This document shows, piece after piece, positions 662 to 36,926 of a stretch of 64,000 nucleotides of DNA (position 1 is its first letter; each line of letters starts with the position of its first letter). The translations under genes were made by a program, and so were the position numbers. The notes under the pieces are model-generated. The model did no database searches. It worked only from the letters and a program-made list of their open reading frames with translations, and was not told the DNA's origin. The stretch spans positions 38,192,001-38,256,000 of the forward strand of contig NC_091283.1 of NCBI RefSeq assembly GCF_032444005.1, in the 5' to 3' direction. The DNA comes from Ranitomeya imitator. Its lineage: Eukaryota.

Positions 662-772
662 GACGAGAGCATCAAGCACCACTGAAAATGTATATATTCT
701 CTGCTGTCATTGGAGCTGAAGCATGTGTTATAGTAATCCTGATTGCTGTGGTTATTAGGAATCATTCCCGAG
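662..772 (+). CDS. Gene A transmembrane exon (Ig-superfamily-type inhibitory receptor)
   Basis: Acceptor tttttttctcag|GA and donor CGAG|gtttgt, phase 1 at both ends. Translates (G)REHQAPLKMYIFSAVIGAEACVIVILIAVVIRNHSR: a ~23-residue hydrophobic stretch followed by basic residues. Confidence 0.8.
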
Positions 773-870
773 GTTTGTATGAATGTACATGTGGAAGTCA
801 GAAATAATAATTTCCATGATTTACAAGCGTACATTCTGTCACATATTGGTAAAAGTAGACAGCATGGCGA

Positions 871-961
871 TGGGCTGGATGTTATATACCATAGTGGTGA
901 GGGGCTATATGTTATACACCATGGTGGTGAGGGGCTGGATGTTATACACCATGGTGGTGAG
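871..961. repeat. 30-bp minisatellite, left part (split by the hAT insertion)
   Basis: Three units of gttatacaccatggtggtgaggggctggat, the same unit as at 9014 onward. Confidence 0.95.
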
Positions 962-2819
962 TAGGGTTGAGCGACCTTGACTTTTTTAGAGTCGAGTCGG
1001 GTTTCGCAAAACCCGACTATCTCAAAAGTCGGGTCGAGTGAAATCGGCCGATTATGTCGAAAAGTCGGGATCGACCGAAACACGAAACCCAATGCAAGTC
1101 AATGGGGCAGCATAGTCGGCAGTGAGTGGGGGGCCAGGAAAACACCTAGAGTGCCCATTTTAATGGCAAAAACATCCATTCTTCTTAATGAAGCTTGTCA
1201 ATCTTAATTTCCCTTATAATAATAGTTAGGCATTGGAAATTGGGGGTCATTTGGCTAAAGTTGTTGGGGGTAGGGCTGGTTCAAGTATTTTGTGGGCCCA
1301 GGAAATCTGGACCACGTCACGGCAGTGGAGCAGGGCGAGGTAAGTATTTAAACTTTGCAAGTGCTGTGATCCTGAGCAAGCAGGGGGGGGGCACTGTTTG
1401 GCATTGGCACTGGCACAGGGCCCCTCAAAGTACGGCGGTGTGTTTGCACGGCGGGGGCACCTCCCACCGGCAGCGACACTTTTGTGTACTATGAGGGGCC
1501 CTGTGCCAGTGACGTCGCCAACGAGTATCCCCCCCACCTGATGAAGGAACCTGCACTTTCATCTGCACCTTCCTCTTTGTCCCCTTGAAAGGTGGTATAG
1601 TATGTGGGAAGGGGAACCTGAATTTTAGCAGGGTCAGATTCTGGCTGTGTAGCGTGCAAGGGGAATGTAGTGGTCTGGGGCAATGTACCAGCAGACTCAT
1701 CTATCACTGGCTGGGCAATGGGCAGGATGAGGAGGAAACACAGATATAGGCCCAAATAATAAAGTGGGCTAAATGCAGTTCAAAATTGAAAGGCAAGTTT
1801 AGGACCTGGTATAAGAGAGATGCCGTAAAGTGGCTACCAGGTACACATAAAATTGGCCATTTTTATGCGCTAAACGCTCTCATTTTTCATATTTCTAGTG
1901 CAGTAATACAGTTCAATTTTCGTGTTTTATGTTTGTATGTTTTAGCGCTGCAGTGTGGTGCCTTATTTATTTGACTATATATGAGTTGGCGACTCTAGGT
2001 TCAGCACCTGTTCACACTTAGTCTATGTTTGGATGTGACGGTCAGTCTTTTGAAACAAATCAGTAAGTAGGCTAAATGCAGTTCAAAATTGGAAACAGAA
2101 GTAAACAGGCGGCACTGGTTTGTTCAGTGGAGAACAGCAAGGAGCGGCAGACACTGTTAGTAGGGCCAACAAAACAAGTAGGCCAAATGCATTGTTATAT
2201 TACAAAATTTAACGAGAGCCTCAAAATTGAAGCTAAGGAAAGGCAACCTGGAGAACACCTTGGAGCGGCAGACACCGTTTCTAGAACCCAACCAAACAAG
2301 TAGGCCCACTGCAGTTTTTAAATAAAAAAAAAACTCTTCAACGAGAGACTGAAAATTGAAGCTCAGAGGAGGACCGCTGTATTGAGTGGCGTAGACACAC
2401 AGGTAGTAGGCCTTAAACAAAAAATTTGTCTCAATGCAGTTTAAAAAAAGGTTACAGGGGTACACAGGCAGCATTGGTGTGGTCAGCGGAGGACAATTTA
2501 AATTAGGGACTGCAGACAGACTTAGTAGGATGTCCCCTGTGGACCATGCATCCACCACATTAACCCAGTGCGCCGTAATGGACACGCAACCTTCCGTGGA
2601 CATGCCTACTGGTCCATGCGTCTGTTGTCAGGTGCACCTTTGTACTCACAGATTGCCTGAGTGCATGGACGATGCGGTCTTTTACATGCTGGTGGAGGGC
2701 TGGGATGGCTTTTCTCGCAAAAGAAGTGTCGACTGGGTAGCTCGTACCGTGGTACAGCGTAGTCCATCTGGGCTTTATAAATATAAAATAAAGAAAAAAA
2801 GTAGGCTCTATGCACTTTC

Positions 2820-3310
2820 AACTAGGTTCCAGGGGTACACGGCCAGCATTGGTCTGGTCAGTGGAGGACAATTTCAATTATGGACCGCAGACAGACTTAG
2901 TACGCCTACAATTAAAAAAAGGATGCTCTATGCAATTTAAAATAGGTTCCAGGGGTACACGGCCAGCATTGGTCTGGTCAGTGGAGGACTATTGGAAGGA
3001 GGGTGTAGGCACTTTAAAATAGGTTCCAGGGGTACACGGGCAGCAGTGGTGTGGTCAGTGGAGGACTATTGGAAGGAGGGACCGCAGACAGACTCAGTAC
3101 TAGGCCTAACATAACAAAAGTAGGCTGTAGGCAATTTAAAATTGGTTCCAAGGGTACACGGGCAGCAGTGGTCTGGTCAGTGGAGGACTAGTGGAAGGAG
3201 GGACCGCAGACAGGCTTAGTAGGCCTAACATAACAAAAGTAGGCTCTATGCACTTGGAATTATCTTGCAGGGGTACACAGGCAGCATTGGTGTTGTCAGC
3301 GGAGGCCGAT
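2820..3310. repeat. Internal imperfect tandem repeats of the hAT element (ggttccaggggtacacgggcagcagtggtctggtcagtggaggact...)
   Basis: About five imperfect copies visible. Confidence 0.8.
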
Positions 3311-3976
3311 TGTAAGGAGTGTCTGACAGTTAGTACTCACAAAAAATAAATAGATGTTAATGTCTCGCAATACAACAAAACCAAAAAACAAAAGGGTGGC
3401 ATACTTAGGTACAGGGGTGGGCTCCTCTGCTGAGTTTCAGACCTAGTAATTTGGCGCTAAGTATTTACTGGTGTAAATATAGGACACTGCCCCTGACTAT
3501 TTTAAGTAGCATCATACATGTCAACACATTGGTATTGTCAGTGCCAGGCATTGAAGGATGTCAGCGCATAGACTAAACATTGGTGGAGCTGTGAGAGATA
3601 ATTTTGCAAATCGTAGAGCACTGTTTGAGCTGGGGGGGGGAACTGTCTTGTGGCCGGCGGTACAGGCCCTGGGCCCCTCATGTTACAACAGTGTGTCTGA
3701 CGTTGGTTGCGCGCCACCACCGCCAGAGACACTTTATTGTACTATGAGGGACCCAGTGGCAGTGCCGTCGACCAAAAGCGTGCACACCCACCTCTTCAGA
3801 CAAACGGCACTCTCACGGGTGCTTGCGCCAAGTTGCGAGACCACGGCCCCGCGGGGGGAGTTTGCCCATTTAGGGAGGTGTAAACATGTCATATGCTGGA
3901 CAAACAGCTGCTGCAAATTACGAGATTGGAAAACTCAGTCAGACCAGTCCACAAGCAAGACCTTTTCATAGGAAAG

Positions 3977-6900
3977 CTAGGTGTCAGCCGGGAAAGGTGG
4001 GGCAAAAGAATTCGAAATCCAGGAGTGGTTCATTTTAATGAAGGTTAGATCATCAACATTTTGGGTAGCCAGACGAGTCCTTTTTTCGGTTAATATTGAA
4101 CCAGCAGCACTGAATACTCTTTCTGATAGCACACTAGCTGCTGGGCAAGCAAGCTCCTGCAATGCATATTCTGCCAATTCTGGCCAGGTGTCTAATTTGG
4201 ATGCCCAGTAATCAAATGGGAATGACGGTTGAGGGAGAACATCGATAAGGGATGAAAAATAGTTAGTAACCATACTGGACAAATGTTGTCTCCTGTCACT
4301 TTGAATTGATGCTGCAGTACCTGTCCTGTCTGCGGTCATAGCAAAATCACTCCACAACCTGGTCAGAAAACCCCTCTGTCCAACGCCACTTCTGATTTGT
4401 GCACCTCTAACACCTCTGGTCTGCTGCCCCCTGCAGCTCGTGTGAGAACCATCACCGGCGCTGTGTGCTGGGAATGCCTGAATCAAACGGTCAACAAGAG
4501 TTGATTGTTTGGTTGCTAATATTTGTTCCAGGTTCTCATGTGGCATAATATTTAGCAATTTGCCTTTATAGCGAGGATCAAGGAGGCAGGCCAACCAGTA
4601 ATCGTCATTGGTCATCATTTTAATAATGCGTGGGTCCCTTTTGAGGATACGTAAGGCATAATCCGAAATGTGGGCCAAAGTTCCAGTTGTCAAATCTGCG
4701 GATGTGCTGGGTTGAGGGGCAGTTACAGGCAAATCTACGTCACTTGTGTCCCTCAAAAAAACAGAACCCGGCCTTGCCACGCCACCAATTTCCATTGGCC
4801 CCGGAGAAGCTTCCTCATTAAAAAAAAGTCATCCCCATCATCCTCCTCGTCCTCCTCCTCCTGTTCGCCCGCTACCTCGTCCTGTACACTGCCCTGACCA
4901 GACAATGGCTGACTGTCATCAAGGCTTTCCTCTTCCTCTGCTGCAGACGCCTGCTCCTTTATGTGCGTCAAACTTTGCATCAGCAGACGCATTAGGGGGA
5001 TGCTCATGCTTATTATGGTGTTGTCTGCACTAACCAGCCGTGTGCATTCCTCAAAACACTGAAGGACTTGACACATGTCTTGTACCTTCGACCACTGCAC
5101 ACCTGACAACTCCATGTCTGCCATCCAACTGCCTGCCCGTGTATGTGTATCCTCCCACAAATACATAACAGCACGCCTCTGTTCGCACAGTCTCTGAAGC
5201 ATGTGCAGTGTTGAGTTCCACCTTGTTGCAACGTCGATGATTAGGCGATGCTGGGGAAGGTTCAAAGACCGCTGATAGTTCTGCATACGGCTGGAGTGTA
5301 CGGGCGAACGGCGGATATGCGAGCAAAGTCTGCGCACTTTGAGGAGCAGGTCGGATAACCCCGGATAACTTTTCAGGAAGCACTGCACCACCAGGTTTAA
5401 GGTGTGAGCCAGGCAAGGAATGTGTTTCAGTTGGGAAAGGGCTATGGCAGCCATGAAATTCCTTCCGTTATCACTCACTACCTTGCCTGCCTCAAGATGT
5501 ACAGTGCCCAGCCATGACTGCGTTTCTTTCTGCAAGAACTCGGACAGAGCTTCTGCGGTGTGTCTGTTGTCACCCAGACACTTCATTGCCAATACAGCCT
5601 GCTGACGCTTGCCAGTAGCTGCCCCATAATGAGACACCTGGTGTGCAACAGTGGCAGCTGCGGATGGAGTGGTTGTGCGACTGCGGTCTGTGGACGAGCT
5701 CTCGCTTCTGCAGGAGGAGGAGGAGGAGGGGGGGCGAACGGCTAAAGCCAACTGTTTCCTAGACCGTGGGCTAGGCAGAACTGTCCCAATATTGCTGTCC
5801 CCTGCGGACCCTGCATCCACCACATTCACCCAGTGTGCCGTGATGGACACGTAACGTCCCTGGCCATGCCTACTGGTCCATGCATCTGTGGTCAGGTGCA
5901 CCTTTGTACTCACAGATTGCCTGAGTGCATGGACAATGCGCTCTTTAACATGCTGGTGGAGGGCTGGGATGGCTTTTCTCGAAAAGAAGTATCGACTGGG
6001 TAGCTCGTAGCGTGGTACAGCGTAGTCCATCAGGGCTTTGAAAGCTTCGCTTTCAACTAACCGGTAGGGCATCATCTCTAACGAGATTAGTCTAGCTATG
6101 TGGGCGTTCAAACCCTGTGTACGCGGATGCGAGGCTAAGTACTTCCTTTTTCTAATGAGAGTCTCGTGTAGGGTGAGCTGGACTGGAGAGCTAGAGATTG
6201 TGGAACTAGCGGGGGTGCCGGTGGACATGGCAGACTGAGAGACGGTTGGAGACGGTATTCTTGCCGGTGCCCTACATGCAGTGTTTCCTACTACGAAACT
6301 GGTGATTCCCTGACTGCTTTGGCCTGGCAACGAAACCTGCACAGATACTGCAGGTGGTGCGGGAAATGGTGGCCTTACAGTGACGGAAGGGATGTAGCGT
6401 TGCTGACTAGCTTCATTGGCCGAGGGTGCTACAACCTTAAGGGACGTTTGGTAGTTAGTCCAGGCTTGCAAATACATGGTGGTTAAATGTCTATGCATGC
6501 AACTTGTATTTAGACTTTTCAGATTCTGACCTCTGCTTAAGGTAGTTGAACATTTTTGACAGATGACTTTGCGCTGATCATTTGGATGTTGTTTAAAAAA
6601 ATGCCAGACTGCACTCTTTCTACCATCGGATACCTTTTCAGGCATTGCAGACTGAGCTTCTTTAACCAGATGGCCACGCTGTCCTCCAACAGGTTTTGGC
6701 TTTGCCACGCGTTTTGGGCCAGATACGGGCCCGGCAGATGGAACCTGTTGCGATGTTGATGCCTGCTGCGGCCCCTCCTCCTCCGCTTCAGAACTGCCGC
6801 CTGCACCCTGTTCCCCCAATGGCTGCCAATCGGGGTCAACAACTGGGTCATCTATGACCTCCTCTTCTATCTCGTGTGCAACTTCGTCTGTGTCACCGTG

Positions 6901-7517
6901 TAAGCCGGTGGTATAGCGTTCGTGACGGGGCACCATAGTCTCATCAGGGTCTGATTCTGGATTAGTACACTGCGAGGGCAATGTTCTGGTCTGAGTCAAA
7001 GGAACAGCATAGTAGTCTGGCTGTGGCTGTGCTTCTGTGCACTCCATGTCCGATTCAACTTCTAATGGGCATAGCCTGTTAACTGTTTCACTTTCTAAGT
7101 CAGGAACGGTATGTGTAAAGAGCTCCATGGAGTAACCCGTGCTGCATTCTTCTCTGTTGTTGTTTTTGATGAAGAGGACAAGGAAGTGACTTGTCCCTGA
7201 CCGTGAACATCCACTAACGACGCGCTGCTTTTACATTTACCAGTTTCAGAAGAGGAGGCGAAAGAGCTAGAGGCTGAGTCAGCAAGGAAAGCCAAAACTT
7301 GCTCTTGCTGCTCCGGCTTTAAAAGCGGTTTTCCTACTCCCAGAAAAGGGAGCGTTCGAGGCCTTGTGTTGCCAGACGATGACGGTGGCTCCACAACTCG
7401 AAACTTAGCTGCTATATTGCTCTTCCCACGACCACCTGATGCTCCACCACCACTACCATCATTACCAGCTGGCAATGACCGCCCACGGCCACGACCTCTT
7501 CCACCAGACTTCCTCAT
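3977..7517 (-). pseudogene. hAT (ZBED/Ac-like) transposase with two frameshifts
   Basis: ATG at 7517 (MRKSGGRGRGRG); BED finger AVWHFF..CQKC; catalytic motifs TTDAWTS, VSDNGRN, SERVFS; C-terminal hAT dimerisation segment WPELAEYALQELACPAAS. Frame changes near 7130-7145 and at the A8 run at 4820-4827. Confidence 0.9.
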
Positions 7518-7629
7518 TGTTTGCAAAACGTAACCAAAGTAACGGTATTTGTTACTGTAAAACAACTTACAAGGTGAACTCAAACTTCTGTAGGATTTAG
7601 ATATCCCTTTATAGGTGGGTGAGACTGCA

Positions 7630-8230: not shown

Positions 8231-9013
8231 TGTGGCAGAAAGTGGCTTGAAGAGATATAACGAAACAAAGAAAAAAAAAAACAGGGAGTGTCCTTCAATT
8301 ACTATCTCCCTGCCTGCAGTAATCTCAGCCAGGTATGGCAGGCAGCAATAAGGAGTGGACTGATGCACAAATTAAATAAAAAGTGTGGACAAACAAACAA
8401 GATGGCTGTGCAGAAAGGAAGGAACAAGAGGATTTGTGCTTTGAAAAAAGCAGTTGGTTTGCACAGCGGCGTACACACAGCAATGCAGCTATCAGGGAGC
8501 CTTCTAGGGCAGCCCAATGAGCTACAGCGCTGAGGGGGAAAAAAAAAAAAAAAAAACTTCCACTGTCCCTGCACACCGAGGGTGGTGTTGGACAGTGCAA
8601 ATCGCTGCAGCACAAGCGGTTTTGTGGTTAATGGACCCTGCCTAACGCTATCCCTGCTTCTGACAAAGCGGCAGCAACCTCTCCTTATGCTCAGATCAGC
8701 AGCAGTAAGATGGCGGTCGGCGGGAACGCCTCTTTATAGCCCCTGTGACACCGCAGACAGCAAGCCAATCACTGGATTGCCCTTCTCTAAGATGGTGGGG
8801 ACCAGGACCTATGTCATCACGCTGCCCACACTCTGCGTCCACCTTCATTGGCTGAGAAATGGCGCTTTTCGCGTCATTGAAACGCGACTTTGGCGCGAAA
8901 GTCGCGTACCGCATGGCCGACCCCACACAGGGATCGGATCGGGTTTCATGAAACCCGACTTTGCCAAAAGTCGGCGACTTATGAAAATGAACGATCCGTT
9001 TCGCTCAACCCTA

Positions 9014-11150
9014 GTGGTGAGGGGCTGGATGTTATACACCATGGTGGTGAGGGGCTGGATGTTATATACCATGGTGGTGAGGGGCTGGATGTTATACACC
9101 ATGGTGGTGAGGAGCTAGATGTTATACACCATGGTGGTGAGGGGCTGGATGTTATACACCATGGTGGTGAGGGGCTGGATGTTATACACCATGGTGGTGA
9201 GGGGCTGGATGTTATATACCATGGTGGTGAGGGGCTGGATGTTATACACCATGGTGGTGAGGGGCTGGATGTTATACACCATGGTGGTGAGGGGCTCGAT
9301 GTTATACACCATGGTGGTGAGGAGCTGGATGTTATACACCATGGTGGTGAGGGGCTGGATGTTATACACCATGGTGGTGAGGAGCTGGATGTTATACACC
9401 ATGGTGGTGAGGGGCTGGATGTTATACACCATGGTGGTGAGGAGCTGGATGTTATACACCATGGTGGTGAGGGCCTGGATGTTATACACCATGGTGGTGA
9501 GGGCCTGGATGTTATACACCATGGTGGTGAGGGGCTCGATGTTATACACCATGGTGGTGAGGGGCTCGATGTTATACACCATGGTGGTGAGGGGCTCGAT
9601 GTTATACACCATGGTGGTGAGGGGCTGGATGTTATACACCATGGTGGTGAGGGGCTGGATGTTATACACCATGGTGGTGAGGGGCTGGATGTTATACACC
9701 ATGGTGGTGAGGGGCTGGATGTTATACACCATGGTGGTGAGGGCCTGGATGTTATACACCATGGTGGTGAGGAGCTGGATGTTATACACCATGGTGGTGA
9801 GGAGCTGGATGTTATACACCATGGTGGTGAGGGCCTGGATGTTATACACCATGGTGGTGAGGGCCTGGATGTTATACACCATGGTGGTGAGGGCCTGGAT
9901 GTTATACACCATGGTGGTGAGGGCCTGGATGTTATACACCATGGTGGTGAGGGCCTGGATGTTATACACCATGGTGGTGAGGGGCTCGATGTTATACACC
10001 ATGGTGGTGAGGGGCTGGATGTTATACACCATGGTGGTGAGGGGCTGGATGTTATACACCATGGTGGTGAGGGGCTGGATGTTATACACCATGGTGGTGA
10101 GGGCCTGGATGTTATACACCATGGTGGTGAGGGGCTGGATGTTATACACCATGGTGGTGAGGGGCTGGATGTTATACACCATGGTGGTGAGGGCCTGGAT
10201 GTTATACACCATGGTGGTGAGGGCCTGGATGTTATACACCATGGTGGTGAGGGCCTGGATGTTATACACCATGGTGGTGAGGGCCTGGATGTTATACACC
10301 ATGGTGGTGAGGGCCTGGATGTTATACACCATGGTGGTGAGGAGCTGGATGTTATACACCATGGTGGTGAGGGCCTGGATGTTATACACCATGGTGGTGA
10401 GGGCCTGGATGTTATACACCATGGTGGTGAGGGCCTGGATGATATACACCATGGTGGTGAGGGCCTGGATGTTATACACCATGGTGGTGAGGGCCTGGAT
10501 GTTATACACCATGGTGGTGAGGGCCTGGATGTTATACACCATGGTGGTGAGGGCCTGGATGTTATACACCATGGTGGTGAGGGGCTGGATGTTATACACC
10601 ATGGTGGTGAGGGCCTGGATGTTATACACCATGGTGGTGAGGGCCTGGATGTTATACACCATGGTGGTGAGGGCCTGGATGTTATACACCATGGTGGTGA
10701 GGGGCTGGATGTTATACACCATGGTGGTGAGGCCTGGATGTTATACACCATGGTGGTGAGGGCCTGGATGTTATACACCATGGTGGTGAGGGCCTGGATG
10801 TTATACACCAGAGGCAACAGGGATGGCTGTTATACACTCAGGGGAGGTGACCAGATTTTATACACTGGAGTCTGAGGGGCTGGATGTTACACACCGGGGG
10901 GCAAAGGGCCGGATGTTATACACTGAGGAGGGGTGAGAGGCCAGATCTTAGAAACCGGGGTGGGTGAGGGGCTGCATGTTAGATGTTATGCACCAGGGAG
11001 TGAGGGGCTGGATGTTGCACACCGGGGGCAATGAGGCCAGATATTATACTACGGGAGGTAAGGGACCGGATGATATACACAGGAAATGAGGCCAAATATT
11101 ATATACAGGGTGCTGGATGTTACACGCAGGGGGGCAACAGGGATGGATGT
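9014..11150. repeat. 30-bp minisatellite, about 60 near-perfect copies to ~10800, then degenerate
   Basis: Unit gttatacaccatggtggtgaggggctggat with the internal palindrome caccatggtg; accounts for the long low-complexity ORFs here. Confidence 0.97.
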
Positions 11151-11524: not shown

Positions 11525-11547
11525 GTTTATCGAGATCTAAAGATCAG
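11525..11547 (+). CDS. Gene A 23-bp cytoplasmic exon
   Basis: Acceptor cttcttttgctttcttcacag|GT and donor CAG|gtgtgt. Phase 1 in and phase 0 out link the TM exon to the ITIM exon; encodes (G)LSRSKDQ. Confidence 0.65.
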
Positions 11548-13616: not shown

Positions 13617-13778
13617 AATCCGCAGTTGGATCCTTCAGGCCTTCAGTACGCCGAGATCGCTAAGAAAAGTTTCCATAAACGGTCAAGACCTAGAGTCGAG
13701 GTGGATGCCGTCACCTACTGCGCCGTCAAGGTCAACCGCGAAGAACATTCAACCAATCTTGACTGCGAATTATATTAA
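13617..13778 (+). CDS. Gene A terminal exon with two ITIMs
   Basis: Acceptor tatttttgtag|AAT, phase 0. Translates NPQLDPSGLQYAEIAKKSFHKRSRPRVEVDAVTYCAVKVNREEHSTNLDCELY*; LQYAEI (13641-13658) and VTYCAV (13710-13727) fit (I/V/L/S)xYxx(L/V/I). Confidence 0.8.
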   Translation, partial: NPQLDPSGLQYAEIAKKSFHKRSRPRVEVDAVTYCAVKVNREEHSTNLDCELY

Positions 13779-15403
13779 ATGGTCTTTAATGAAAAAATCT
13801 GGTCAAAGCCAAGGCCTGAAGAGGACCAATAGTATCAAGTAGAGGATGTGTAGCGATTTACCCGGACGTCTGCCTTTTAAGAACATATTGTACCTTTCAT
13901 TTACATGTTTTGCTTTATTCATCTTCACAGGTTTAACCCCTCTGTGACCTTAGACGTACTATCCCGTCGAGGTGCCCTGGGCTTATCTGACCCTGGACGG
14001 GATAGTACGTCATAGCCGATCGGCCGCGCTCACGGGGGGAGCGCGGCCGATCGCGGCCGGGTGTCAGCTGCTTATCGCAGCTGACATCCGGCACTATGTG
14101 CCAGGAGCGGTCACGGACCGCCCCCGGCACATTAACCCCTGGCACACCGCGATCAAAGATGATCGCGATGTGCCGGCGGTGCAGGGAAGCACCGCGCAGG
14201 GAGGGGGCTCCCTGCGGGCTTCCCTGAGCCCCCCGCAGCAACGCGATGTGATCGCGTTGCTGCGAGGGTCTCCTCACCTCCCTCCCTGCTCGAGCCCCGG
14301 ATCCAAGATGGCCGCGGATCCGGGTCCTGCAGGGAGGGAGGTGGCTTCATAGAGCCTGCTCAGAGCAGGCACTGTGAAGCAGCCTGCACTCCTATCAGAT
14401 CAGTGATCTGACAGAGTGCTGTGCAAACTGTCAGATCACTGATCTGTGATGTCCCCCCCTGGGACAAAGTAAAAAAGTTAAAAAAAAATTTTCCAAATGT
14501 GTAAAAAAAATAAAAAAAAATATTCCAAAATAATGAAAAAAAAAAAAAAATATTATTCCCATAAATACATTTCTTCATCTAAATAAAAAAAAAAACCCAA
14601 TAAAAGTACACATATTTAGTATCGCCGCGTCCGTAACGGCCCGACCTATAAAACTGGCCCACTAGTTAACCCCTTCAGTAAACACCGTAAGAAAAAAAAA
14701 AAAAAAACGAGGCAAAAAACAACGCTTTATTATCATACCGCCGAACAAAAAGTGGAATAACACGCGATCAAAAGGACAGATATAAATAACCATGGTACCG
14801 CTGAAAGCGTCATATTGTCCCGCAAAAAAAGAGCCGCCATACAGCATCATCAGCAAAAAAATAAAAAAGTTATAGTCCTGAGAATAAAGCGATGCAAAAA
14901 TAATTATTTTTTCTGTAAAATAGTTTTTATTGTATAAAAGCACCAAACCATAAAAAAATGATATAAATGAGGTATCGCTGTAATCGTACTGACCCGAAGA
15001 ATAAAACTGATTTATCAATTTTACCAAACGCGGAACGGTATAAACGCCTCCCCCAATAGAAATTCATGAATAGCTGGCTTTTGGTCATTCTTCCTCACAA
15101 AAATCGGAATAAAAAGCGATAAAAAAATGTCACGTGCCCAAAAATGTTTTCAATAAAAACGTCAACTCGTCCCGCAAAAAACAAGACCTCACATGACTCT
15201 GTGGACCAAAATATGGAAAAATTATAGCTCTCAAAATGTGGTATTGCAAAAAATATTTTTTGCAATAAAAAGGGTCTTTCAGTGTGTGACGGCTGCCAAT
15301 CATAAAAATCCGCTAAAAAACTCGCTATAAAAGTAAATCAAACCCCCCTTCATCACCCCCTTAGTTAGGGAAAAATAAAAAAAAATGTATTTATTTCCAT
15401 TTT

Positions 15404-15679
15404 NNNNNNNNNNNNNNNNNNNNNNNNNNNNNNNNNNNNNNNNNNNNNNNNNNNNNNNNNNNNNNNNNNNNNNNNNNNNNNNNNNNNNNNNNNNNNNNNN
15501 NNNNNNNNNNNNNNNNNNNNNNNNNNNNNNNNNNNNNNNNNNNNNNNNNNNNNNNNNNNNNNNNNNNNNNNNNNNNNNNNNNNNNNNNNNNNNNNNNNNN
15601 NNNNNNNNNNNNNNNNNNNNNNNNNNNNNNNNNNNNNNNNNNNNNNNNNNNNNNNNNNNNNNNNNNNNNNNNNNNNNNN
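15404..15679. other. Assembly gap
   Basis: Run of N. Confidence 1.
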
Positions 15680-15820
15680 GGGGCTAAAGTTAGGGTTAGG
15701 GTTTAGATTACATTTACAGTTGGGAATAGGGTTGGGATTAGGGTTAGGGGTGTGTCAGGGTTAGAGGTGTGGTTAGGGTTACCGTTGGAATTAGGGTTAG
15801 GGGTGTGTTTAGATTAGGGT
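15680..15820 (+). repeat. Degenerate telomere-like (TTAGGG)n tract inside the piggyBac-like element
   Basis: Repeated ttaggg/gttaggg hexamers directly after the N-gap at 15404-15679. Confidence 0.75.
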
Positions 15821-15849
15821 TTCAGTTATAATTGGGGGGTTTCCACTGT

Positions 15850-23841: not shown

Positions 23842-23905
23842 ATGAAGGCGTCAGCTCTTCTCGTGGTCAGCCTGGTCCTGATCCTGGTGGTTCACACGAG
23901 CACAG
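23842..23905 (+). CDS. Gene B signal-peptide (leader) exon
   Basis: aagATGA context; MKASALLVVSLVLILVVHTST; consensus phase-1 donor CAG|gtaaga, typical of IgSF leader exons. Confidence 0.85.
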
Positions 23906-24346: not shown

Positions 24347-25247
24347 NNNNNNNNNNNNNNNNNNNNNNNNNNNNNNNNNNNNNNNNNNNNNNNNNNNNNN
24401 NNNNNNNNNNNNNNNNNNNNNNNNNNNNNNNNNNNNNNNNNNNNNNNNNNNNNNNNNNNNNNNNNNNNNNNNNNNNNNNNNNNNNNNNNNNNNNNNNNNN
24501 NNNNNNNNNNNNNNNNNNNNNNNNNNNNNNNNNNNNNNNNNNNNNNNNNNNNNNNNNNNNNNNNNNNNNNNNNNNNNNNNNNNNNNNNNNNNNNNNNNNN
24601 NNNNNNNNNNNNNNNNNNNNNNNNNNNNNNNNNNNNNNNNNNNNNNNNNNNNNNNNNNNNNNNNNNNNNNNNNNNNNNNNNNNNNNNNNNNNNNNNNNNN
24701 NNNNNNNNNNNNNNNNNNNNNNNNNNNNNNNNNNNNNNNNNNNNNNNNNNNNNNNNNNNNNNNNNNNNNNNNNNNNNNNNNNNNNNNNNNNNNNNNNNNN
24801 NNNNNNNNNNNNNNNNNNNNNNNNNNNNNNNNNNNNNNNNNNNNNNNNNNNNNNNNNNNNNNNNNNNNNNNNNNNNNNNNNNNNNNNNNNNNNNNNNNNN
24901 NNNNNNNNNNNNNNNNNNNNNNNNNNNNNNNNNNNNNNNNNNNNNNNNNNNNNNNNNNNNNNNNNNNNNNNNNNNNNNNNNNNNNNNNNNNNNNNNNNNN
25001 NNNNNNNNNNNNNNNNNNNNNNNNNNNNNNNNNNNNNNNNNNNNNNNNNNNNNNNNNNNNNNNNNNNNNNNNNNNNNNNNNNNNNNNNNNNNNNNNNNNN
25101 NNNNNNNNNNNNNNNNNNNNNNNNNNNNNNNNNNNNNNNNNNNNNNNNNNNNNNNNNNNNNNNNNNNNNNNNNNNNNNNNNNNNNNNNNNNNNNNNNNNN
25201 NNNNNNNNNNNNNNNNNNNNNNNNNNNNNNNNNNNNNNNNNNNNNNA
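24347..25247. other. Assembly gap in gene B intron 1
   Basis: Run of N. Confidence 1.
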
Positions 25248-26643: not shown

Positions 26644-26865
26644 GTGCTCAAAAAAATCTATTGGTGAGGCAACCATTGTTCATCAAGACAAAAGTTGGGG
26701 AATCGGTGACCATTTCTTGCTTCTTTGCAACGAGGTCGCCTTCGTTTACTGTGAAGTGGATGTTATTTTACCAGTTGACGTCTCTTCTTGAGCATCAAAG
26801 TTACAGAGACAGAATAACCCTGAGCTCAACCTTGTTGCACGTTGCTCCAGTCGTGCAGGTGGAAG
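26644..26865 (+). CDS. Gene B V-type Ig domain exon (NKp30/XMIV-like pattern), short and lacking the F-strand Cys
   Basis: Acceptor ttctctccgtttgttag|GT and donor GAAG|gtaatt, phase 1 at both ends. Translates GAQKNLLVRQPLFIKTKVGESVTISCFFATRSPSFTVKWMLFYQLTSLLEHQSYRDRITLSSTLLHVAPVVQVE with V-set hallmarks VxQP, GxSVTISC, C-strand W and RxRI; no DxGxYxC. Confidence 0.8.
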
Positions 26866-30064: not shown

Positions 30065-33000
30065 ATGGACATTAGAAGTCTGTCTTCATTTGTGGATCAG
30101 CTCTCGGCAAGAGTACAAAAGATTCAAGACACTATTGATCAGAAATCTATGTTAGAACCAAAAATTCCTATTCCTGATTTGTTTTTTGGAGATAGAACTA
30201 AGTTTCTGAGTTTCAAAAATAATTGTAAGCTATTTCTGGCCTTGAAACCTCGCTCCTCTGGTGATCCAGTTTAACAGGTTTTGATTATTATTTCTTTTTT
30301 GCGCGGCGACCCTCAGGACTGGGCATTTTCTCTTGCGCCAGGAGATCCTGCATTAAGTAATATTGATGCGTTTTTCCTGGCGCTCGGATTGCTGTACGAT
30401 GAGCCTAATTCAGTGGATCAGGCAGAAAAGAATTTGCTGGCTCTTTGTCAGGCTCAGGATGAGATAGAGGTATATTGTCAGAAATTTAGAAAGTGGTCCG
30501 TTCTCACTCAATGGAATGAATCTGCGCTGGCAGCTATGTTCAGAAAGGGTCTCTCTGAAGCCCTTAAGGATGTCATGGTGGGATTTCCTATGCCTGCTGG
30601 TTTGAATGAGTCTATGTCTTTGGCCATTCAGATCGGTTGACGCTTGCGTGAGCGTAAATCTGTGCACCATTTGGCGGTATTACCTGAGCTTAAACCTGAG
30701 CCTATGCAGTGCGATAGGACTTTGACCAGAGTTAAACGGCAAGAACACAGACGTCTGAATGGGCTGTGTTTCTACTGTGGTGATTCCACTCATGCTATCT
30801 CTGATTGTCCTAAGCGCACTAAGCGGTTCGCTAGGTCTGCCACCATTGGTACGGTACAGTCAAAATTTCTTCTGTCCGTTACCTTGATCTGCTCTTTGTC
30901 ATCGTATTCTGTCATGGCATTTGTGAATACAGGCGCTGCCCTGAATTTGATGGACTTGGAGTATGCTAGGCGTTGTGGGTTTCTCTTAGAGCCCTTGCAG
31001 TGTCCTATTCCATTGAGAGGAATTGATGCCACGCCTTTGGCCAAGAATAAGCCTCAATACTGGACCCAGCTGACCATGTGCATGGCTCCTGCACATCAGG
31101 AGGTTATTCGCTTTCTGGTGTTGCATAATCTGCATGATGTGGTCGTGTTGGGGTTGCCATGGCTACAAGCCCATAATCCAGTATTAGATTGGAAATCCAT
31201 GTCAGTGTCCAGCTGGGGTTGTCAGTGGGTACATGGTGATGTTCCATTTCTGTCAATTTCGTCATCCACCCCTTCTGAGGTTCCAGAGTTCTTGTCTGAT
31301 TACCGGGATGTATTTGATGAGCCCAAGTCCGATACCCTACCTCCGCATAGGGATTGTGATTGTGCTATCAATTTGATTCCTGGTAGTAAATTCCCAAAAG
31401 GTCGACTGTTTAATTTATCCGTGCCTGAGCACGCCGCTATGCGCAGTTATGTGAAGGAATCCCTGGAGAAGGGGCATATTCGCCCGTCATCGTCACCATT
31501 AGGAGCAGGGTTCTTTTTTGTAGCCAAGAAGGATGGTTCGCTGAGACCTTGTATAGATTACCGCCTTCTTAATAAGATCACGGTTAAATTTCAGTACCCC
31601 TTGCCATTGTTATCTGATTTGTTTGCTCGGATTAAGGGGGCTAGTTGGTTCACCAAGATAGATCTTCGTGGTGCGTATAATCTGGTGCGAATCAGGCGAG
31701 GCGATGAATGGAAAACTGCATTTAATACGCCCGAGGGTCATTTTGAGTATCTAGTGATGCCATTCGGACTTGCCAATGCTCCATCAGTGTTTCAGTCCTT
31801 TATGCATGACATCTTCCGAGAGTACCTGGATAAATTCCTGATTGTGTACTTGGATGACATTTTGATCTTCTCGGATGATTGGGAGTCTCATGTGAAGCAG
31901 GTCAGAACGGCTTTTCAGGTCCTGCGTGCTAATTCTTTGTTTGTGAAGGGATCAAAGTGTCTCTTTGGTGTGCAGAAGGTTTCATTTTTGGGGTTCATCT
32001 TTTCCCCTTCTACTATCGAGATGGATCCTGTTCAGGTCCAAGCCATCCATGATTGGACTCAGCCGACATCTCTGAAAAGTCTGCAAAAGTTTCTGGGCTT
32101 TGCTAATTTTTATCGTCGCTTCATCTGCAATTTTTCTAGTATTGCCAAACCATTGACCGATTTGACCAAGAAGGGTGCGGATTTGGTCAATTGGTCTTCT
32201 GCTGCTGTGGAAGCTTTTCAGGAGTTGAAGCGTCGTTTTTCTTCTGCCCCTGTGTTGTGTCAACCAAATGTTTCTCTTCCGTTCCAGGTCAAGGTTGATG
32301 CTTCTGAGATTGGAGCAGGGGCTGTTTTGTCGCAGAGAGATTCTGATTGCTCAGTGATGAAACCATGCGCTTTTTTTTCCAGGAAGTTTTCGCCTGCTGA
32401 GCGAAATTATGATGTGGGCAACCGAGAGTTGCTGGCCATGAAGTGGGCATTTGAGGAGTGGCGTCATTGGCTTGAAGGAGCTAAGCATCTCGTGGTGGTA
32501 TTGACTGATCATAAGAACTTGACTTATCTCGAGTCTGCTAAGCGGTTGAATCCTAGACAGTCTCGTTGGTCGCTGTTTTTTGCCCGTTTTGACTTTGTGG
32601 TTTCGTACCTTCCGGGCTCTAAAAATGTGAAGGCGGATGCTCTGTCTAGGAGTTTTGTGCCCGACTCTCCGGGTTTGTCTGAGCCGGCGGGTATCCTCAA
32701 GGAAGGAGTAATTGTGTCTGCCATCTCCCCTGATTTGCGGCGAGTGCTGCAAAAATTTCAGGCTAATAAACCTGATCGTTGTCCAGCGGAGAGACTGTTT
32801 GTCCCTGATAGGTGGACCAATAAAGTTATCTCTGAGGTTCATTGTTCGGTGTTGGCTGGTCATTCTGGAATCTTTGGTACCAGAGAGTTGGTGGCTAGAT
32901 CCTTTTGGTGGCCGTCTCTGTCGCGGGATGTGCGTGCTTTTGTGCAGTCCTGTGGGACTTGTGCTCGGGCTAAGCCCTCCTGTTCTCGTGCCAGTGGGTT

Positions 33001-34282
33001 GCTTTTGCCCTTGCCAGTCCCGAAGAGGCCTTGGACACATATCTCTATGGATTTTATTTCAGATCTTCCCGTTTCTCAAAAGATGTCAGTCATTTGGGTG
33101 GTCTGTGATCGCTTTTCTAAGATGGTCCATCTGGTACCCTTGTCTAAATTGCCTTCCTCCTCTGATTTGGTGCCATTGTTCTTCCAGCATGTGGTTCGTT
33201 TACATGGCATTCCAGAGAATATCGTTTCTAACAGAGGTTCCCAGTTTGTTTCGAGGTTTTGGCGAGCCTTTTGTGGTAGGATGGGCATTGACTTGTCTTT
33301 TTCCTCGGCTTTCCATCCTCAGACTAATGGCCAGACCGAACGAACCAATCAGACCTTGGAAACATATCTGAGATGCTTTGTTTCTGCCGATCAGGATGAC
33401 TGGGTGTCCTTTTTGCCTTTGGCTGAGTTCGCCCTTAATAATCGGGCCAGCTCGGCTACCTTGGTTTCGCCATTTTTTTGCAATTCTGGGTTCCATCCTC
33501 GTTTCTCTTCAGGACAGGTTGAGTCTTCGGACTGTCCTGGTGTGGATACTGTGGTGGACAGGTTGCAGCAGATTTGGACTCCTGTAGTGGACAATTTGAC
33601 CTTGTCCCAGGAGAAGGCTCAACGTTTCGCTAATCGCAGACGCCGTGTGGGTCCCCGACTTCGTGTTGGGGATCTGGTTTGGTTATCTTCTCGTCATATT
33701 CCTATGAAGGTTTCCTCTCCTAAGTTTAAACCTCGTTTTATTGGTCCGTATAGGATTTCTGAGGTTCTTAATCCTGTGTCTTTTCGTCTGACCCTCCCAG
33801 ATTCTTTTTCCATACATAACGTTTTCCATAGGTCATTGTTGCGGAGATACGTGGCACCTACGGTTCCATCTGTTGACCCTCCTGCCCCGGTTTTGGTGGA
33901 GGGGGAATTGGAGTATATTGTGGGGAAGATTTTGGATTCTCGTGTTTCAAGACGGAAACTCCAGTATCTGGTTAAATGGAAGGGTTATGCTCAGGAAGAT
34001 AATTCCTGGGTTTTTGCCTCTGATGTCCATGCTCCCGATCTTGTTCGTGCCTTTCATGTGGCTCATCCTGGTCGGCCTGGGGGTTCGGTGACCCCTCCTC
34101 AAGGGGGGGGTACTGTTGTGAATTCTGTGGCAGAGCTCCCTCCTGTGGTCACAAGTGGTACTTCGGCTGATTCTCTCTGGGAGCTTCCGTTTGTGGAGGA
34201 AAGTGGTACTGCGGCTTCTGAGTTTCCTCCCTCAGGTGATCTGGTGAGGTCGTTAGGTGCTTCTCTACTTAACTCCACCTAA
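30065..34282 (+). pseudogene. Gypsy 1 single-frame gag-pol with two in-frame stops
   Basis: ATG at 30065; TAA at 30272-30274 and TGA at 30638-30640; protease motif reads VNTGA where elements 2 and 3 have VDSGA; chromodomain ILDSR...QYLVKWKGY. Confidence 0.92.
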
Positions 34283-35099: not shown

Positions 35100-35730
35100 A
35101 TGTTTCTTGTGCGATGTGTTTTTTGTAGCTTTGTCAGTCTGCAGGCTCAAATCCTGTAGTTCTTTAGCTCATCTCCAGAAGAAGACTGTCACAACTCATT
35201 TTTGGAGTCATCACAGCCTGGTTCTGCTTTAATTCAAACATGGTTGTTACTTTTGGGCCAGCAAGAGTTAATGTCAATGTCCTTGCTGGCAGCTGCTGTG
35301 TTGCTGGTCAGCTGATGTGGGTTGTGACCTTTCCCACCATCCTTTAAATAGTCACATGATGCATCAGCTGACTGTTGGTAATAGAGTTTATCTCTGGAGA
35401 CCATCCTAGGAGTTGGGAGCTCTCTGGTGCCAGAAGTGTATCAGCTTCTTCGGTGGAGTTGGAGGTCCTGGTTCAATGTCCTTTGCTGTGTGGAGCTTTG
35501 CAGCAGAGGCTTGAGCTAAGTTATCGTTGTCTGTCTGGTGCTTGTCACTACCCCCTGTCTTTACCATGTGCAGTGATGAGTCTAGCGTCCGTGCCTGTCA
35601 GTGCACTAGCCAGGGTTTAGTGAGGTGACAGCTAGAGACTAGGCATTTGACGGTGACGGGGGAAGGACCCGTATAGGGCATTAGGGGAGCTTAGGGATAG
35701 GCACAGGCTGTGTTAGGAGGTGCCTCATCC
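35100..35730 (+). mobile_element. Degenerate LTR-like fragment
   Basis: Starts TG; central tttaaatag; 3' part (agggcattaggggagcttagggataggc) resembles the 3' ends of the LTRs in this window; no clear CA end or TSD. Confidence 0.35.
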
Positions 35731-35920
35731 CTTGTGGGGAAATTTTGCTACAGAAAACACTAAGTAATGTTTCTGTGTAATTAAATTCCTGAAGGAGATG
35801 CTTTAAAACATTCCCAATAATGTTTCAGTGAGTGCAGAGATTCTTGTGTGAGCACAAACAATTCAATAGCCAAGTACAGGGCAGACAGGCAATTTTTTGG
35901 AACCAAGTTATGTTGATATA

Positions 35921-36161
35921 NNNNNNNNNNNNNNNNNNNNNNNNNNNNNNNNNNNNNNNNNNNNNNNNNNNNNNNNNNNNNNNNNNNNNNNNNNNNNNNN
36001 NNNNNNNNNNNNNNNNNNNNNNNNNNNNNNNNNNNNNNNNNNNNNNNNNNNNNNNNNNNNNNNNNNNNNNNNNNNNNNNNNNNNNNNNNNNNNNNNNNNN
36101 NNNNNNNNNNNNNNNNNNNNNNNNNNNNNNNNNNNNNNNNNNNNNNNNNNNNNNNNNNNNN
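35921..36161. other. Assembly gap in gene B intron 2
   Basis: Run of N. Confidence 1.
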
Positions 36162-36682
36162 AAGAGACCACCACATCAAACCTCTGTCATTGGCAGCCCA
36201 ATCTCCAGACCTGAACCCCATTGAGAAGCTCTGGAATGTAATCAAGAGGACGATGGATAGTCACAAGCCATCAAGCAGAGAAGAACTGCTTACATTTTTG
36301 CGCCAGAAGCCGTGTGACAGACTGGTGGAAAGCATGCCAAGACCCATGAAAGCTGGGATTAAAAATCATGGTTATTCCACAATATATTGATTCCTGAACT
36401 CTTCCTGAGCTAAAACATTAATATTATTGTTTCTAAATGATTATGAACTTGTTTTCATTACATTATTTGACGTCTGAAAGCACCGTTTTATTTTTTAATT
36501 TTGACCATTTTTCTTTGTCAGAAAAAAAATACAAAATTTATTTCTTGGAAATTTAGAGACATCTTGTCAGAAGTTTATAGCATAAAAGAACAATTTATAG
36601 TTTACTCAAAAATATACCTATAAAGAGAAAAATCAGAGAAACTGAACATTTTGCAGTGGTCTCTTAATTTTTGCCAGAGCTG
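36162..36682 (+). mobile_element. Tc1/mariner 3' fragment
   Basis: Translation AQSPDLNPIEKLWNVIKR matches the Tc1 SPDLNPIExxW motif; terminus ...ttgccagagctg|TA; 5' part lost in the gap. Confidence 0.85.
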
Positions 36683-36822
36683 TATATATATATATATGTA
36701 TAGATAAATATATATAATAAAATAATACGATCTATTATTTCCACATGTTTACAAGTGGTTCATATAAGCTACTATAAAAAACTTCATATCAGGTAGTAAT
36801 TTTTACCTTTTTTGATTCACAG

Positions 36823-36926
36823 AATATTTTTCTCAAACCGTCTGTATCGTGATAGAGGTCGTCCGCATGACAGTTCTTACCATCATCATCATCCTGCTAA
36901 GTGTAATAATCAAGAAGCTGCCTTAA
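36823..36926 (+). CDS. Gene B transmembrane/terminal exon with intramembrane Arg and very short tail (activating-type)
   Basis: Acceptor ttttaccttttttgattcacag|AA, phase 1 matching the V exon donor; (E)YFSQTVCIVIEVVRMTVLTIIIILLSVIIKKLP*. Confidence 0.8.

What the first reader, a model, noticed from the sequence alone, without database searches (positions are those of the whole stretch)
662..36926. Hidden inhibitory/activating receptor pair, probably an unannotated amphibian paired Ig-receptor cluster
Seen: six small exons buried in transposons join with matching phases into two tandem + strand membrane proteins. Gene A ends in two ITIMs; gene B is leader, V domain, then an Arg-containing TM with a 4-residue tail. 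Established: ITIM-tailed receptors next to charged-TM short-tail receptors define paired immune receptor families (KIR, LILR, SIRP, CD300, fish NITR), and Xenopus has expanded V-domain families of this kind (NKp30 homologues, MHC-linked XMIV). Inference: this is a lineage-specific paired V-type cluster. Gene A's ectodomain lies upstream of the window, so homology between A and B cannot be seen here.
Basis: partly seen in the sequence, partly recalled or inferred. Interest (0 to 1): 0.82.

Follow-up and report, generated by a model that had tools for sequence, protein, structure and literature searches.

The report
Frog inhibitory receptor plus damaged activating paralogue
The window holds the tail end of an already annotated inhibitory immune-receptor gene of the poison frog Ranitomeya imitator and, 10 kb downstream, an unannotated activating-type sister gene that has lost the core of its binding domain; this is an ordinary, if uncharacterised, paired-receptor family next to an MHC class III marker gene.

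Summary
All six exons and four junctions are real. Gene A (662-772, 11525-11547, 13617-13779) is 100% identical to the last 100 residues of RefSeq XP_069602608.1, "immunoglobulin superfamily member 6-like" of Ranitomeya imitator. So the window is that frog and gene A is already annotated. It is a leader, VJ-type V domain, TM and two-ITIM receptor.

Gene B (23842-23905, 26644-26865, 36823-36926) is not in the protein collection. Its orthologue in Anomaloglossus is a 164-aa leader, V and ExxR-TM protein. Against that protein and the intact Engystomops exon, the window's V exon has a clean in-frame 102-bp deletion. It removes strands E and F, the second cysteine and the G bulge. The remaining part of the exon has changed unusually fast (16 unique changes against 2, p = 0.001). 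B is therefore most likely a decaying or Ig-less gene.

A and B V domains are homologous but only about 35-40% identical. A closer activating twin of the A type exists in R. variabilis.

The order GPANK1-like gene, then A, then B is seen whole in Anomaloglossus and in part in three other hyloid frogs, which points to the MHC class III region. The three N gaps lie in intergenic or intron sequence and touch no exon.

The parts
662..772 (+). Gene A exon encoding the stalk end and TM helix (...MYIFSAVIGAEACVIVILIAVVI RNHSR). It enters in phase 1. The leader and V exons lie upstream of the window.
   Evidence: Acceptor and donor read. 100% identical to P0002 residues 148-184. The TM is a helix at residues 152-180 in the AlphaFold model.
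11525..11547 (+). Gene A 23-nt micro-exon (G-LSRSKDQ).
   Evidence: AG/GT borders. The residues are present in P0002 and conserved across the family.
13617..13779 (+). Gene A last coding exon. It holds ITIM 1 (LQYAEI) and ITIM 2 (VTYCAV), with the tyrosines 23 residues apart, a C-terminal ELY and the stop TAA at 13777-13779.
   Evidence: 100% identical to P0002 residues 192-244 (E = 1.5e-27). Both ITIMs are conserved in 12 family members.
23842..23905 (+). Gene B leader exon, from the ATG (A at -3) to a phase-1 donor.
   Evidence: It aligns with the leader of P0001.
26644..26865 (+). Gene B V exon, truncated. It keeps strands A' to D and G. The 102-bp in-frame deletion has its junction at 26833/26834, inside an ACCTT microhomology. 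A separate 3-bp deletion lies at 26769/26770 and removes one of two adjacent Cys codons.
   Evidence: DNA alignment with the intact Engystomops exon L001:45631-45966. Protein alignments. Strand mapping on the P0001 model. Relative-rate test.
36823..36926 (+). Gene B last exon: TM helix with Glu-x-x-Arg (IEVVRM), tail KKLP, stop TAA at 36924-36926. An AATAAA lies at 37167.
   Evidence: 29 of 34 residues identical to P0001 residues 131-164. Helix at residues 133-162 in the P0001 model.
15404..15679 (.). Assembly gap between gene A and gene B (intergenic).
24347..25246 (.). Assembly gap in gene B intron 1.
35921..36161 (.). Assembly gap in gene B intron 2. Its right flank is the C-end of a Tc1-type transposase.

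Best explanation
The region carries two tandem members of a hyloid-frog multigene family of single-V-domain (VJ-type) membrane receptors. The family lies directly downstream of the GPANK1-like gene, and therefore most likely in the MHC class III region.

Gene A. This is the 3' part of the annotated R. imitator gene for XP_069602608.1, an inhibitory receptor. Inferred mechanism: after ligand binding, the two conserved ITIM tyrosines, 23 residues apart, are phosphorylated. They then recruit tandem-SH2 phosphatases (SHP-1/SHP-2) and damp ITAM signalling.

Gene B. This is the R. imitator copy of an old, syntenic paralogue with an activating-type build: leader, V domain, TM with a conserved Glu-x-x-Arg, and a 4-residue tail. 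In its intact form it would signal through an ITAM adaptor such as FcR-gamma, CD3-zeta or DAP12.

Damage to gene B. In this genome the V exon has lost 102 bp in frame by a microhomology-flanked deletion. That removes strands E and F, the CDR3-like loop and the disulfide cysteine. The rest of the exon has since changed abnormally fast. Gene B is therefore most likely an early-stage pseudogene, or at best an Ig-less remnant.

Shown versus inferred. The gene structures, the homology, the synteny, the deletion and the rate acceleration are shown. The signalling partners, the expression and the loss of function are inferred.
For: - Gene A exons equal P0002/XP_069602608.1 at 100%. Its gene spans 33.2 kb, with an Ank + G-patch gene just upstream. 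The same neighbour is seen in R. variabilis, Engystomops and Anomaloglossus.
- Gene B equals the orthologue P0001 over its full length (E = 7.6e-46).
- Anomaloglossus has the order GPANK1-like, then a 245-aa ITIM gene, then 9.55 kb, then the 164-aa B gene, then a 175-aa V-set gene.
- Engystomops has an intact B-type V exon 8 kb downstream of its A orthologue.
- The 102-bp deletion with ACCTT at both ends, and the retained splice sites, are seen.
- The deletion maps to strands E and F, the F-G hairpin and Cys103/104 of a confident model (pLDDT 84.6).
- Relative-rate test: 16 unique changes against 2, p = 0.001, for the B V exon. Gene A shows 17 against 14, p = 0.72. The B terminal branch is long, 0.69 against 0.057.
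- The family V domain is of VJ type. It aligns through the G-x-G-T-x-L-x-V motif with TCR and Ig V-J regions and folds as a V domain.
- The ITIM pair is conserved in 12 members.
- The activating twin P0018 has VEILRI in its TM and a KKSC tail.
- An N-terminal polar-x-x-Arg TM motif (NxxR) marks FcR-gamma-coupled receptors in Xenopus XFL and in mammalian LILRA2, NKp46, OSCAR and Fc-alpha-R (PMC2413239).
Against: - Gene B still has an open frame over all three exons, intact splice sites, a good start context and a poly(A) signal. Its TM exon is 85% identical to the orthologue. A truncated product may therefore still be made and used.
- dN/dS of the retained V part against Engystomops is 0.28, no higher than gene A's tail at 0.31. 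That path is, however, mostly pre-deletion history.
- No expression data could be consulted.
- The deletion could be an allele or an assembly error.
- MHC linkage rests on one neighbouring gene recognised by its Pfam domains.
- No Xenopus, ranoid or non-frog relatives were recovered. Placement relative to XMIV/NKp30, IGSF6 or other class III IgSF genes is therefore open.
Confidence: 0.72

Rival explanations
1. Gene B is still functional in R. imitator as a truncated protein. It would be a short, non-Ig ectodomain stub on a conserved ExxR transmembrane helix. Such a protein could bind or sequester an ITAM adaptor, or pair with another family member, without binding a ligand itself.
For: - The frame is open across all three exons and the splice sites are kept.
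- Both deletions are in frame, 102 bp and 3 bp.
- The TM exon is 29/34 identical to Anomaloglossus.
- The start context and AATAAA are present.
Against: - Only 129 codons need to stay open, which is easy by chance soon after a deletion.
- The retained ectodomain changes about 8 times faster than its orthologue, as expected for relaxed constraint.
- Neither this 129-aa product nor a near relative from R. imitator or R. variabilis is in the protein collection.
Confidence: 0.17
2. The 102-bp deletion is not fixed biology. It is either a null allele on the assembled haplotype or an assembly collapse at the ACCTT repeat, and an intact gene B exists in the species.
For: - The deletion is flanked by a 5-nt direct repeat.
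- The region has three assembly gaps within 13 kb.
- Immune receptor clusters commonly carry presence/absence variation and null alleles (general knowledge).
Against: - The deletion lies in uninterrupted sequence, 1.4 kb from the nearest gap.
- The same exon also carries a 3-bp deletion, the loss of the family's conserved extra cysteine, and 16 lineage-specific substitutions. An assembly slip would not produce these.
Confidence: 0.1
3. The exons are chance open frames among transposons, and no genes are there.
For: - The window is dominated by hAT, Ty3/gypsy, LINE and Tc1 remnants and by satellites.
- The exons are 23-222 nt long.
Against: - Gene A is 100% identical to a RefSeq protein.
- Gene B matches an orthologue at E = 7.6e-46.
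- Synteny is conserved across species.
Confidence: 0.01

Closest known systems
NKp30 (NCR3) and the V-type IgSF genes of the Xenopus MHC class III region (XMIV)
   Same: - A single non-rearranging VJ-type V domain, a TM and a tail.
- Location next to a class III marker gene.
- Arg in the TM of the activating form.
- According to the abstract of Ohta et al. 2006 as I recall it (my own knowledge; the paper could not be read here), some Xenopus members carry ITIMs.
- VJ genes in the MHC are noted in PMC10751288.
- NCR3 is prone to lineage-specific loss or pseudogenisation (PMC1654159), as gene B seems to be here.
   Different: - No sequence-specific affinity was seen. NKp30 is absent from the best 60 profile hits against PDB, which are led by TCR gamma/delta V, SIRP, V-NAR and Ig light chains.
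- In Foldseek, NKp30 ranks 10th with scores like those of SIRP-alpha and CD79b.
- No Xenopus protein was recovered.
- The TM motif here is Glu-x-x-Arg. The inhibitory forms carry a conserved Glu in their TM.
SIRP-alpha / SIRP-beta, KIR, LILR, CD300 and fish NITR (paired inhibitory/activating IgSF receptors)
   Same: - ITIM-tailed and charged-TM short-tailed members with related ectodomains, clustered in tandem.
- Birth-and-death evolution with pseudogenes.
- SIRP V domains are among the best sequence and fold matches.
   Different: - One V domain only.
- A different genomic region.
- The A-B pair in this window is only 33-40% identical in V. The close twin of the A type (P0018, 72-85% identical to the dendrobatid ITIM forms) lies elsewhere.
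Xenopus FcR-like receptors (XFL)
   Same: - An amphibian-expanded paired family.
- The activating forms have a polar-x-x-Arg motif at the N-terminal end of the TM, linked to FcR-gamma use (PMC2413239).
   Different: - XFLs are built from C2-type domains D1-D6 and use NxxR.
- This family has one VJ-type V domain and ExxR.
IGSF6 (the name RefSeq gives gene A)
   Same: Size of about 240 aa and the build leader, single V, TM, tail.
   Different: - The name is an automatic '-like' label.
- The similarity was not tested here.
- Mammalian IGSF6 is not MHC-linked (my own knowledge), whereas this gene sits beside a GPANK1-like gene.

Membership tests
Paired inhibitory/activating IgSF receptor family (functional class) | One form carries ITIM(s), (S/I/V/L)xYxx(I/V/L), in its cytoplasmic tail | tested here: met
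   LQYAEI and VTYCAV in window 13617-13779. Both are conserved, 23 residues apart, in 12 family members.
Paired inhibitory/activating IgSF receptor family (functional class) | The other form has a basic residue in its TM and a short tail without motifs | tested here: met
   Gene B has ...CIVIEVVRMTVLT...KKLP*. The same build is seen in P0001 and P0018. The TM is a helix in the model.
Paired inhibitory/activating IgSF receptor family (functional class) | The ectodomains of the two forms are homologous | tested here: met
   The window V exon against P0002 V gives E = 7e-10 at 40% identity. The pair is loose, at 33-40% identity. P0018 is 72-85% identical to the dendrobatid ITIM forms.
Paired inhibitory/activating IgSF receptor family (functional class) | Tandem genomic clustering | tested here: met
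   A and B lie 10 kb apart on the same strand. The same order is seen in Anomaloglossus and Engystomops.
Paired inhibitory/activating IgSF receptor family (functional class) | Both members have an intact ligand-binding Ig domain | tested here: not met
   Gene B lacks strands E and F, the F-G loop and the second Cys through a 102-bp deletion.
Paired inhibitory/activating IgSF receptor family (functional class) | SHP-1/2 recruitment by the ITIM form and ITAM-adaptor association by the charged-TM form | not testable with these tools
   Needs biochemistry.
NKp30 (NCR3) / Xenopus XMIV | A single VJ-type V domain encoded in one exon, with the J-like G-x-G-T-x-L-x-V motif | tested here: met
   GTGTGTRLEV in P0002 and GVGNGTLLEV in P0001. 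They align to the TCR/Ig J motif. A single V exon is seen in L001.
NKp30 (NCR3) / Xenopus XMIV | Location in the MHC (class III) | tested here: inconclusive
   The immediate upstream neighbour has Ank + G-patch, the GPANK1/BAT4 architecture, in four species. No further neighbours could be read.
NKp30 (NCR3) / Xenopus XMIV | Closer in sequence or fold to NKp30 than to other V domains | tested here: not met
   NKp30 is not among the best 60 PDB profile hits. Its Foldseek ranks are 10, 21 and 35, with target-normalised TM-scores of 0.70-0.72. SIRP scores 0.61-0.69, CD79b 0.71 and Lrig3 0.75-0.79.
NKp30 (NCR3) / Xenopus XMIV | Orthology or monophyly with Xenopus XMIV genes | not tested
The XMIV papers are not held in the library.
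IGSF6 | Sequence orthology to vertebrate IGSF6 | not tested
   Only the RefSeq '-like' label exists. No IGSF6 reference sequence was available from a tool.

The most novel reading that the evidence does not exclude
The GPANK1-adjacent family could be a separate, hyloid-frog-specific MHC class III paired-receptor system, not orthologous to NKp30/XMIV. It would have its own signalling grammar: Glu-x-x-Arg in the activating TMs, a conserved Glu in the inhibitory TMs and a C-terminal ELY. In R. imitator, the B lineage would persist as an expressed Ig-less stub that tunes adaptor availability rather than binding a ligand.
Probability: 0.1. Interest if true: 0.55.

Novelty: new member of a known kind. 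Interest (0 to 1): 0.36.

Why it matters
- It corrects the annotation picture. Gene A is already a RefSeq model under an uninformative 'IGSF6-like' name. Gene B is missing from the protein sets of R. imitator, and it is damaged.
- It shows that hyloid frogs carry a conserved block, GPANK1 then an ITIM receptor then an activating-type receptor, made of VJ-type IgSF genes. These are candidate NK or myeloid paired receptors in or near the MHC class III region. They could be compared with the Xenopus class III V-type IgSF genes when studying how MHC-linked non-rearranging V genes evolved.
- The gain is incremental. It adds a new family instance and a lineage-specific decay event, not a new principle.

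Tried and rejected
1. I looked for a second half of the V domain, or for paralogous exons, elsewhere in the window. I used tblastn with the exon peptides and with all 18 family proteins, and motif scans for C..W..DxGxYxC and DxGxYxC. Nothing was found beyond the six exons.
2. An Rfam scan of the window gave no matches.
I did not send it elsewhere, and used the exon 3 reference instead.
4. P0001 as a query found only itself. NCBIfam was uninformative.
5. P0005, a hit of the tail search, is a 1312-aa tandem-repeat artefact and was rejected as a chance match.
6. Literature on XMIV: the term is not in the searchable library, and PMC4594805, PMC3709836 and PMC403804 are not held. What I say about XMIV therefore rests on my own recollection.
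I used ORFs instead.
8. I reconstructed the two-exon, 350-aa GPANK1-like CDS of Engystomops in order to walk further upstream. I did not submit it, because that would have meant typing a long sequence.
9. A resemblance to the class III ITIM receptor G6b-B was considered. My first count of the tyrosine spacing (26) was wrong. It is 23, and no sequence test was possible, so I make no such claim.
10. Look-ups for R. variabilis, Anomaloglossus and Bufo returned no DNA, and for P0015, P0016 and P0018 no neighbours either.

Full report

I read the six claimed exons directly and spliced them in a script. Every exon has an AG acceptor and a GT donor, and the phases match.

Gene A (662-772, 11525-11547, 13617-13779) gives a 97-residue open frame. 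It holds a hydrophobic segment (MYIFSAVIGAEACVIVILIAVVI), then a tail with LQYAEI and VTYCAV, then a stop.

Gene B (23842-23905, 26644-26865, 36823-36926) gives a 129-residue protein. It has a leader, a 74-residue exon with the first-half Ig signature (VGESVTISC ... VKW), and a hydrophobic segment with Glu and Arg (CIVIEVVRM...), and it ends in KKLP.

The middle exon is not a whole V domain.
- Pfam gives only sub-threshold Ig hits, covering profile positions 5-40 of 81.
- There is no second cysteine motif in that exon, and no other Ig exon anywhere in the window.

**2. The gaps**

The window has three N runs.
- 15404-15679 lies between the stop of A and the ATG of B.
- 24347-25246 lies in B intron 1.
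- 35921-36161 lies in B intron 2.

None is closer than 441 nt to an exon, so no reading frame crosses a gap.

The flanks do not prove continuity.
- Gap 1 has an A-rich tail on the left and a degenerate TTAGGG-like tract on the right.
- Gap 2 is AT-rich on both sides.
- Gap 3 has a Tc1-type transposase C-end (DDE_3) on the right only.

Indirect support for the scaffold comes from the orthologous locus of Anomaloglossus.
- The A-to-B distance there is 9.55 kb, against 10.06 kb here.
- The B gene there spans 11.8 kb, against 13.1 kb here.
- Every residue of the orthologous B protein is accounted for by the three exons, except a block whose absence lies in uninterrupted sequence.

The look-ups on the same genome returned no DNA.

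**3. What gene A is**

A full HMMER scan with the last exon (53 aa) found a 244-aa protein that is 100% identical over residues 192-244. tblastn shows all three window exons at 100% identity to it. It is XP_069602608.1, 'immunoglobulin superfamily member 6-like' of Ranitomeya imitator.

The R. variabilis orthologue is only 85-92% identical over the same exons. The window is therefore R. imitator.

Gene A is already annotated. Its gene spans 33.2 kb on an 854-Mb chromosome.

The full protein is leader, V domain, stalk, TM and a two-ITIM tail. AlphaFold with the family alignment gives a confident V fold (pLDDT about 88-95 over residues 30-140, lower in one loop), a TM helix at 152-180 and a disordered tail.

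**4. What gene B is**

The spliced product hit a single protein in 5.8 billion. This is P0001 = KAM4019585.1, an 'uncharacterized protein' of 164 aa from the frog Anomaloglossus baeobatrachus. The match covers the full length at E = 7.6e-46.

The alignment is collinear through leader, V and TM. This confirms both B junctions. The exception is a block of 34 residues (TFQDIT...GVGNG) that the window lacks.

Engystomops pustulosus has an intact orthologous V exon (L001:45631-45966, 74% identical to P0001), 8 kb downstream of its gene A orthologue. The DNA alignment against it shows four things.
- A clean 102-bp deletion in the window, with junction at 26833/26834.
- ACCTT at both ends of the deleted block.
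- A separate 3-bp deletion at 26769/26770 that removes one of two adjacent Cys codons.
- Both splice sites conserved.

On a confident model of P0001 (pLDDT 84.6), the lost block covers:
- strand E (residues 88-91);
- strand F (residues 101-108);
- the F-G hairpin;
- the G bulge;
- Cys103/104, which includes the partner of Cys47.

What remains cannot form an Ig sandwich.

The exact 129-aa product is not in the 15-billion-sequence collection. The homology search returned no R. imitator or R. variabilis relative of it. Gene B is therefore unannotated as a protein.

**5. Is gene B decaying?**

I ran a relative-rate test over the 73 retained V codons, with Engystomops as outgroup.
- The window has 16 unique amino-acid changes. 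Anomaloglossus has 2 (binomial p = 0.0013).
- The same test on gene A gives 17 against 14 (p = 0.72).

In the V-domain tree, the window's B branch is 0.69, against 0.057 for Anomaloglossus.

The conserved extra cysteine of the family (W-x-x-G-C) is also gone.

Against decay:
- all three exons are still open;
- the splice sites, the start context and a poly(A) signal are present;
- the TM exon is 29/34 identical to the orthologue;
- pairwise dN/dS against Engystomops is 0.28, about the same as gene A's tail at 0.31, although that path is mostly pre-deletion history.

I conclude that an early pseudogene or an Ig-less remnant is the most likely state. A still-used stub or an allele/assembly artefact remain as rivals.

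**6. The family**

P0002 as query returned 13 proteins, all from hyloid frogs: Ranitomeya, Phyllobates, Dendrobates, Anomaloglossus, Rhinoderma, Engystomops, Leptodactylus and Pristimantis. The tail search added Bufo.

Most are 234-264-aa ITIM forms. Both ITIMs and the 23-residue tyrosine spacing are conserved.

One member, P0018 (R. variabilis LOC143809441, 179 aa), has a V domain 72-85% identical to the dendrobatid ITIM forms. It then has a TM with VEILRI and a KKSC end. This is a classical activating twin. It shares the Glu-x-x-Arg motif and the Lys-Lys-x-x end with gene B.

The B lineage (window, Anomaloglossus, Engystomops) forms its own clade (SH-aLRT 97). It is only 33-40% identical to A-type V domains. 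The homology is still significant (E = 7e-10 to 8e-13).

So the family is paired. The two genes in this window are old paralogues rather than a tight twin pair.

**7. Genomic setting**

Immediately upstream of gene A, on the same strand, lies a gene whose 346-372-aa product has ankyrin repeats plus a G-patch. This holds in R. imitator, R. variabilis, Engystomops and Anomaloglossus.

That architecture is the one of GPANK1 (BAT4), a human MHC class III gene. This identification is established knowledge on my part, not tested here beyond the Pfam domains.

In Anomaloglossus the order is GPANK1-like, then A (245 aa), then B (164 aa), then another V-set gene (175 aa).

It also fits my recollection that Ohta et al. 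2006 reported V-type IgSF genes, some with ITIMs, in the Xenopus class III region. I could not read that paper.

Papers I could read state that:
- non-rearranging VJ genes such as NKp30 reside in the MHC (PMC10751288);
- NCR3 is repeatedly lost or pseudogenised (PMC1654159);
- a polar-x-x-Arg motif at the N-terminal end of the TM marks FcR-gamma-coupled receptors in Xenopus and mammals (PMC2413239).

**8. Which known family?**

The V domain is of VJ type. The G-x-G-T-x-L-x-V motif aligns with the J region of TCR and Ig chains.

A family profile against PDB sequences is led by TCR gamma/delta V, then pIgR, V-NAR, SIRP and Ig light chains. NKp30 is not in the best 60.

Foldseek puts CD79b, Lrig3, SIRP-alpha and NKp30 (ranks 10, 21 and 35) at similar scores.

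Membership in NKp30/XMIV is therefore neither shown nor excluded. 'IGSF6-like' is only RefSeq's automatic label.

Functionally the genes work like any ITIM / charged-TM pair.

**9. Mechanism**

This section is inferred.

Gene A's product would bind an unknown ligand through its V domain. It would be phosphorylated on Tyr202 and Tyr225 and recruit SHP-1/SHP-2.

Intact B-type and P0018-type proteins would pair through the TM arginine with an Asp-bearing ITAM adaptor. The N-terminal position of the Arg favours FcR-gamma or CD3-zeta over DAP12, by analogy with the NxxR class.

In R. imitator, gene B cannot bind a ligand through an Ig fold.

**10. Verdict**

It is wrong in two respects: gene A is not hidden, and gene B is not intact.

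This is a new member of a known kind and of moderate interest. Its main use is for annotation and for comparative MHC/NK-receptor studies in frogs.

Noticed in passing
window 19645-23509; also 51195-51521 and 57303-57920: A 90-bp satellite array of about 43 copies ends roughly 330 bp upstream of gene B's leader exon. The same unit occurs inverted in two shorter arrays downstream.
   Followed up: no
window 9014-10981 and 865-961: A 30-bp minisatellite of about 66 copies (94% matches) fills part of gene A's intron. A 3-copy array of the same unit sits just after the TM exon. The long array produces the overlapping ORFs on both strands at 8890-10875 (the + strand one has no Pfam hit).
   Followed up: partly
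window 15680-15830 and 15833-17663: A degenerate TTAGGG-like (interstitial telomere-like) tract lies directly right of gap 1. It is followed by a 391-bp satellite of 4.7 copies.
   Followed up: no
window 3977-7128 (-), 30644-34282 (+), 45143-48931 (+), 52425-54440 (+), 58144-60411 (-), 61200-63551 (+), 36163-36390 (+): Long transposon ORFs are present:
- hAT transposase (zf-BED plus the hAT dimerisation domain);
- an apparently complete Ty3/gypsy pol of 1212 aa inside gene B intron 2;
- a LINE ORF2 of 1262 aa;
- three more RT-bearing ORFs;
- a Tc1-type DDE_3 C-end at the edge of gap 3.
   Followed up: partly
family proteins P0002-P0019 (gene A TM exon, window 662-772; tail exon, 13617-13779): The inhibitory forms carry three conserved features I cannot explain:
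- a Glu inside the TM (VIGAEACVI);
- a C-terminal E-L-Y;
- an extra cysteine pair in the V domain (W-x-x-G-C ... P-C-Y).
   Followed up: no
L001 20394-20512 and 21244-21477: Inside the Engystomops gene A orthologue there is a second, diverged TM-like exon (72-89% identical over two short pieces) and a tail-like exon (57% identical). This is either an alternative 3' end or a relic of a partial duplication.
   Followed up: no
window 655-661: The polypyrimidine tract and acceptor before gene A's TM exon, read in frame, spell F-S-G. These are the same three residues that end the upstream V exon in XP_069602608.1. This made tblastn extend the hit 7 nt beyond the true acceptor. It is a coincidence and not an exon extension: there is no Cys codon and no AG further upstream.
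   Followed up: yes
window 1-524: A 27-bp / 170-bp nested tandem repeat (CTCCACAGGAAGTGAGGGCGGG...) occupies the first 500 bases, just upstream of gene A's TM exon.
   Followed up: no
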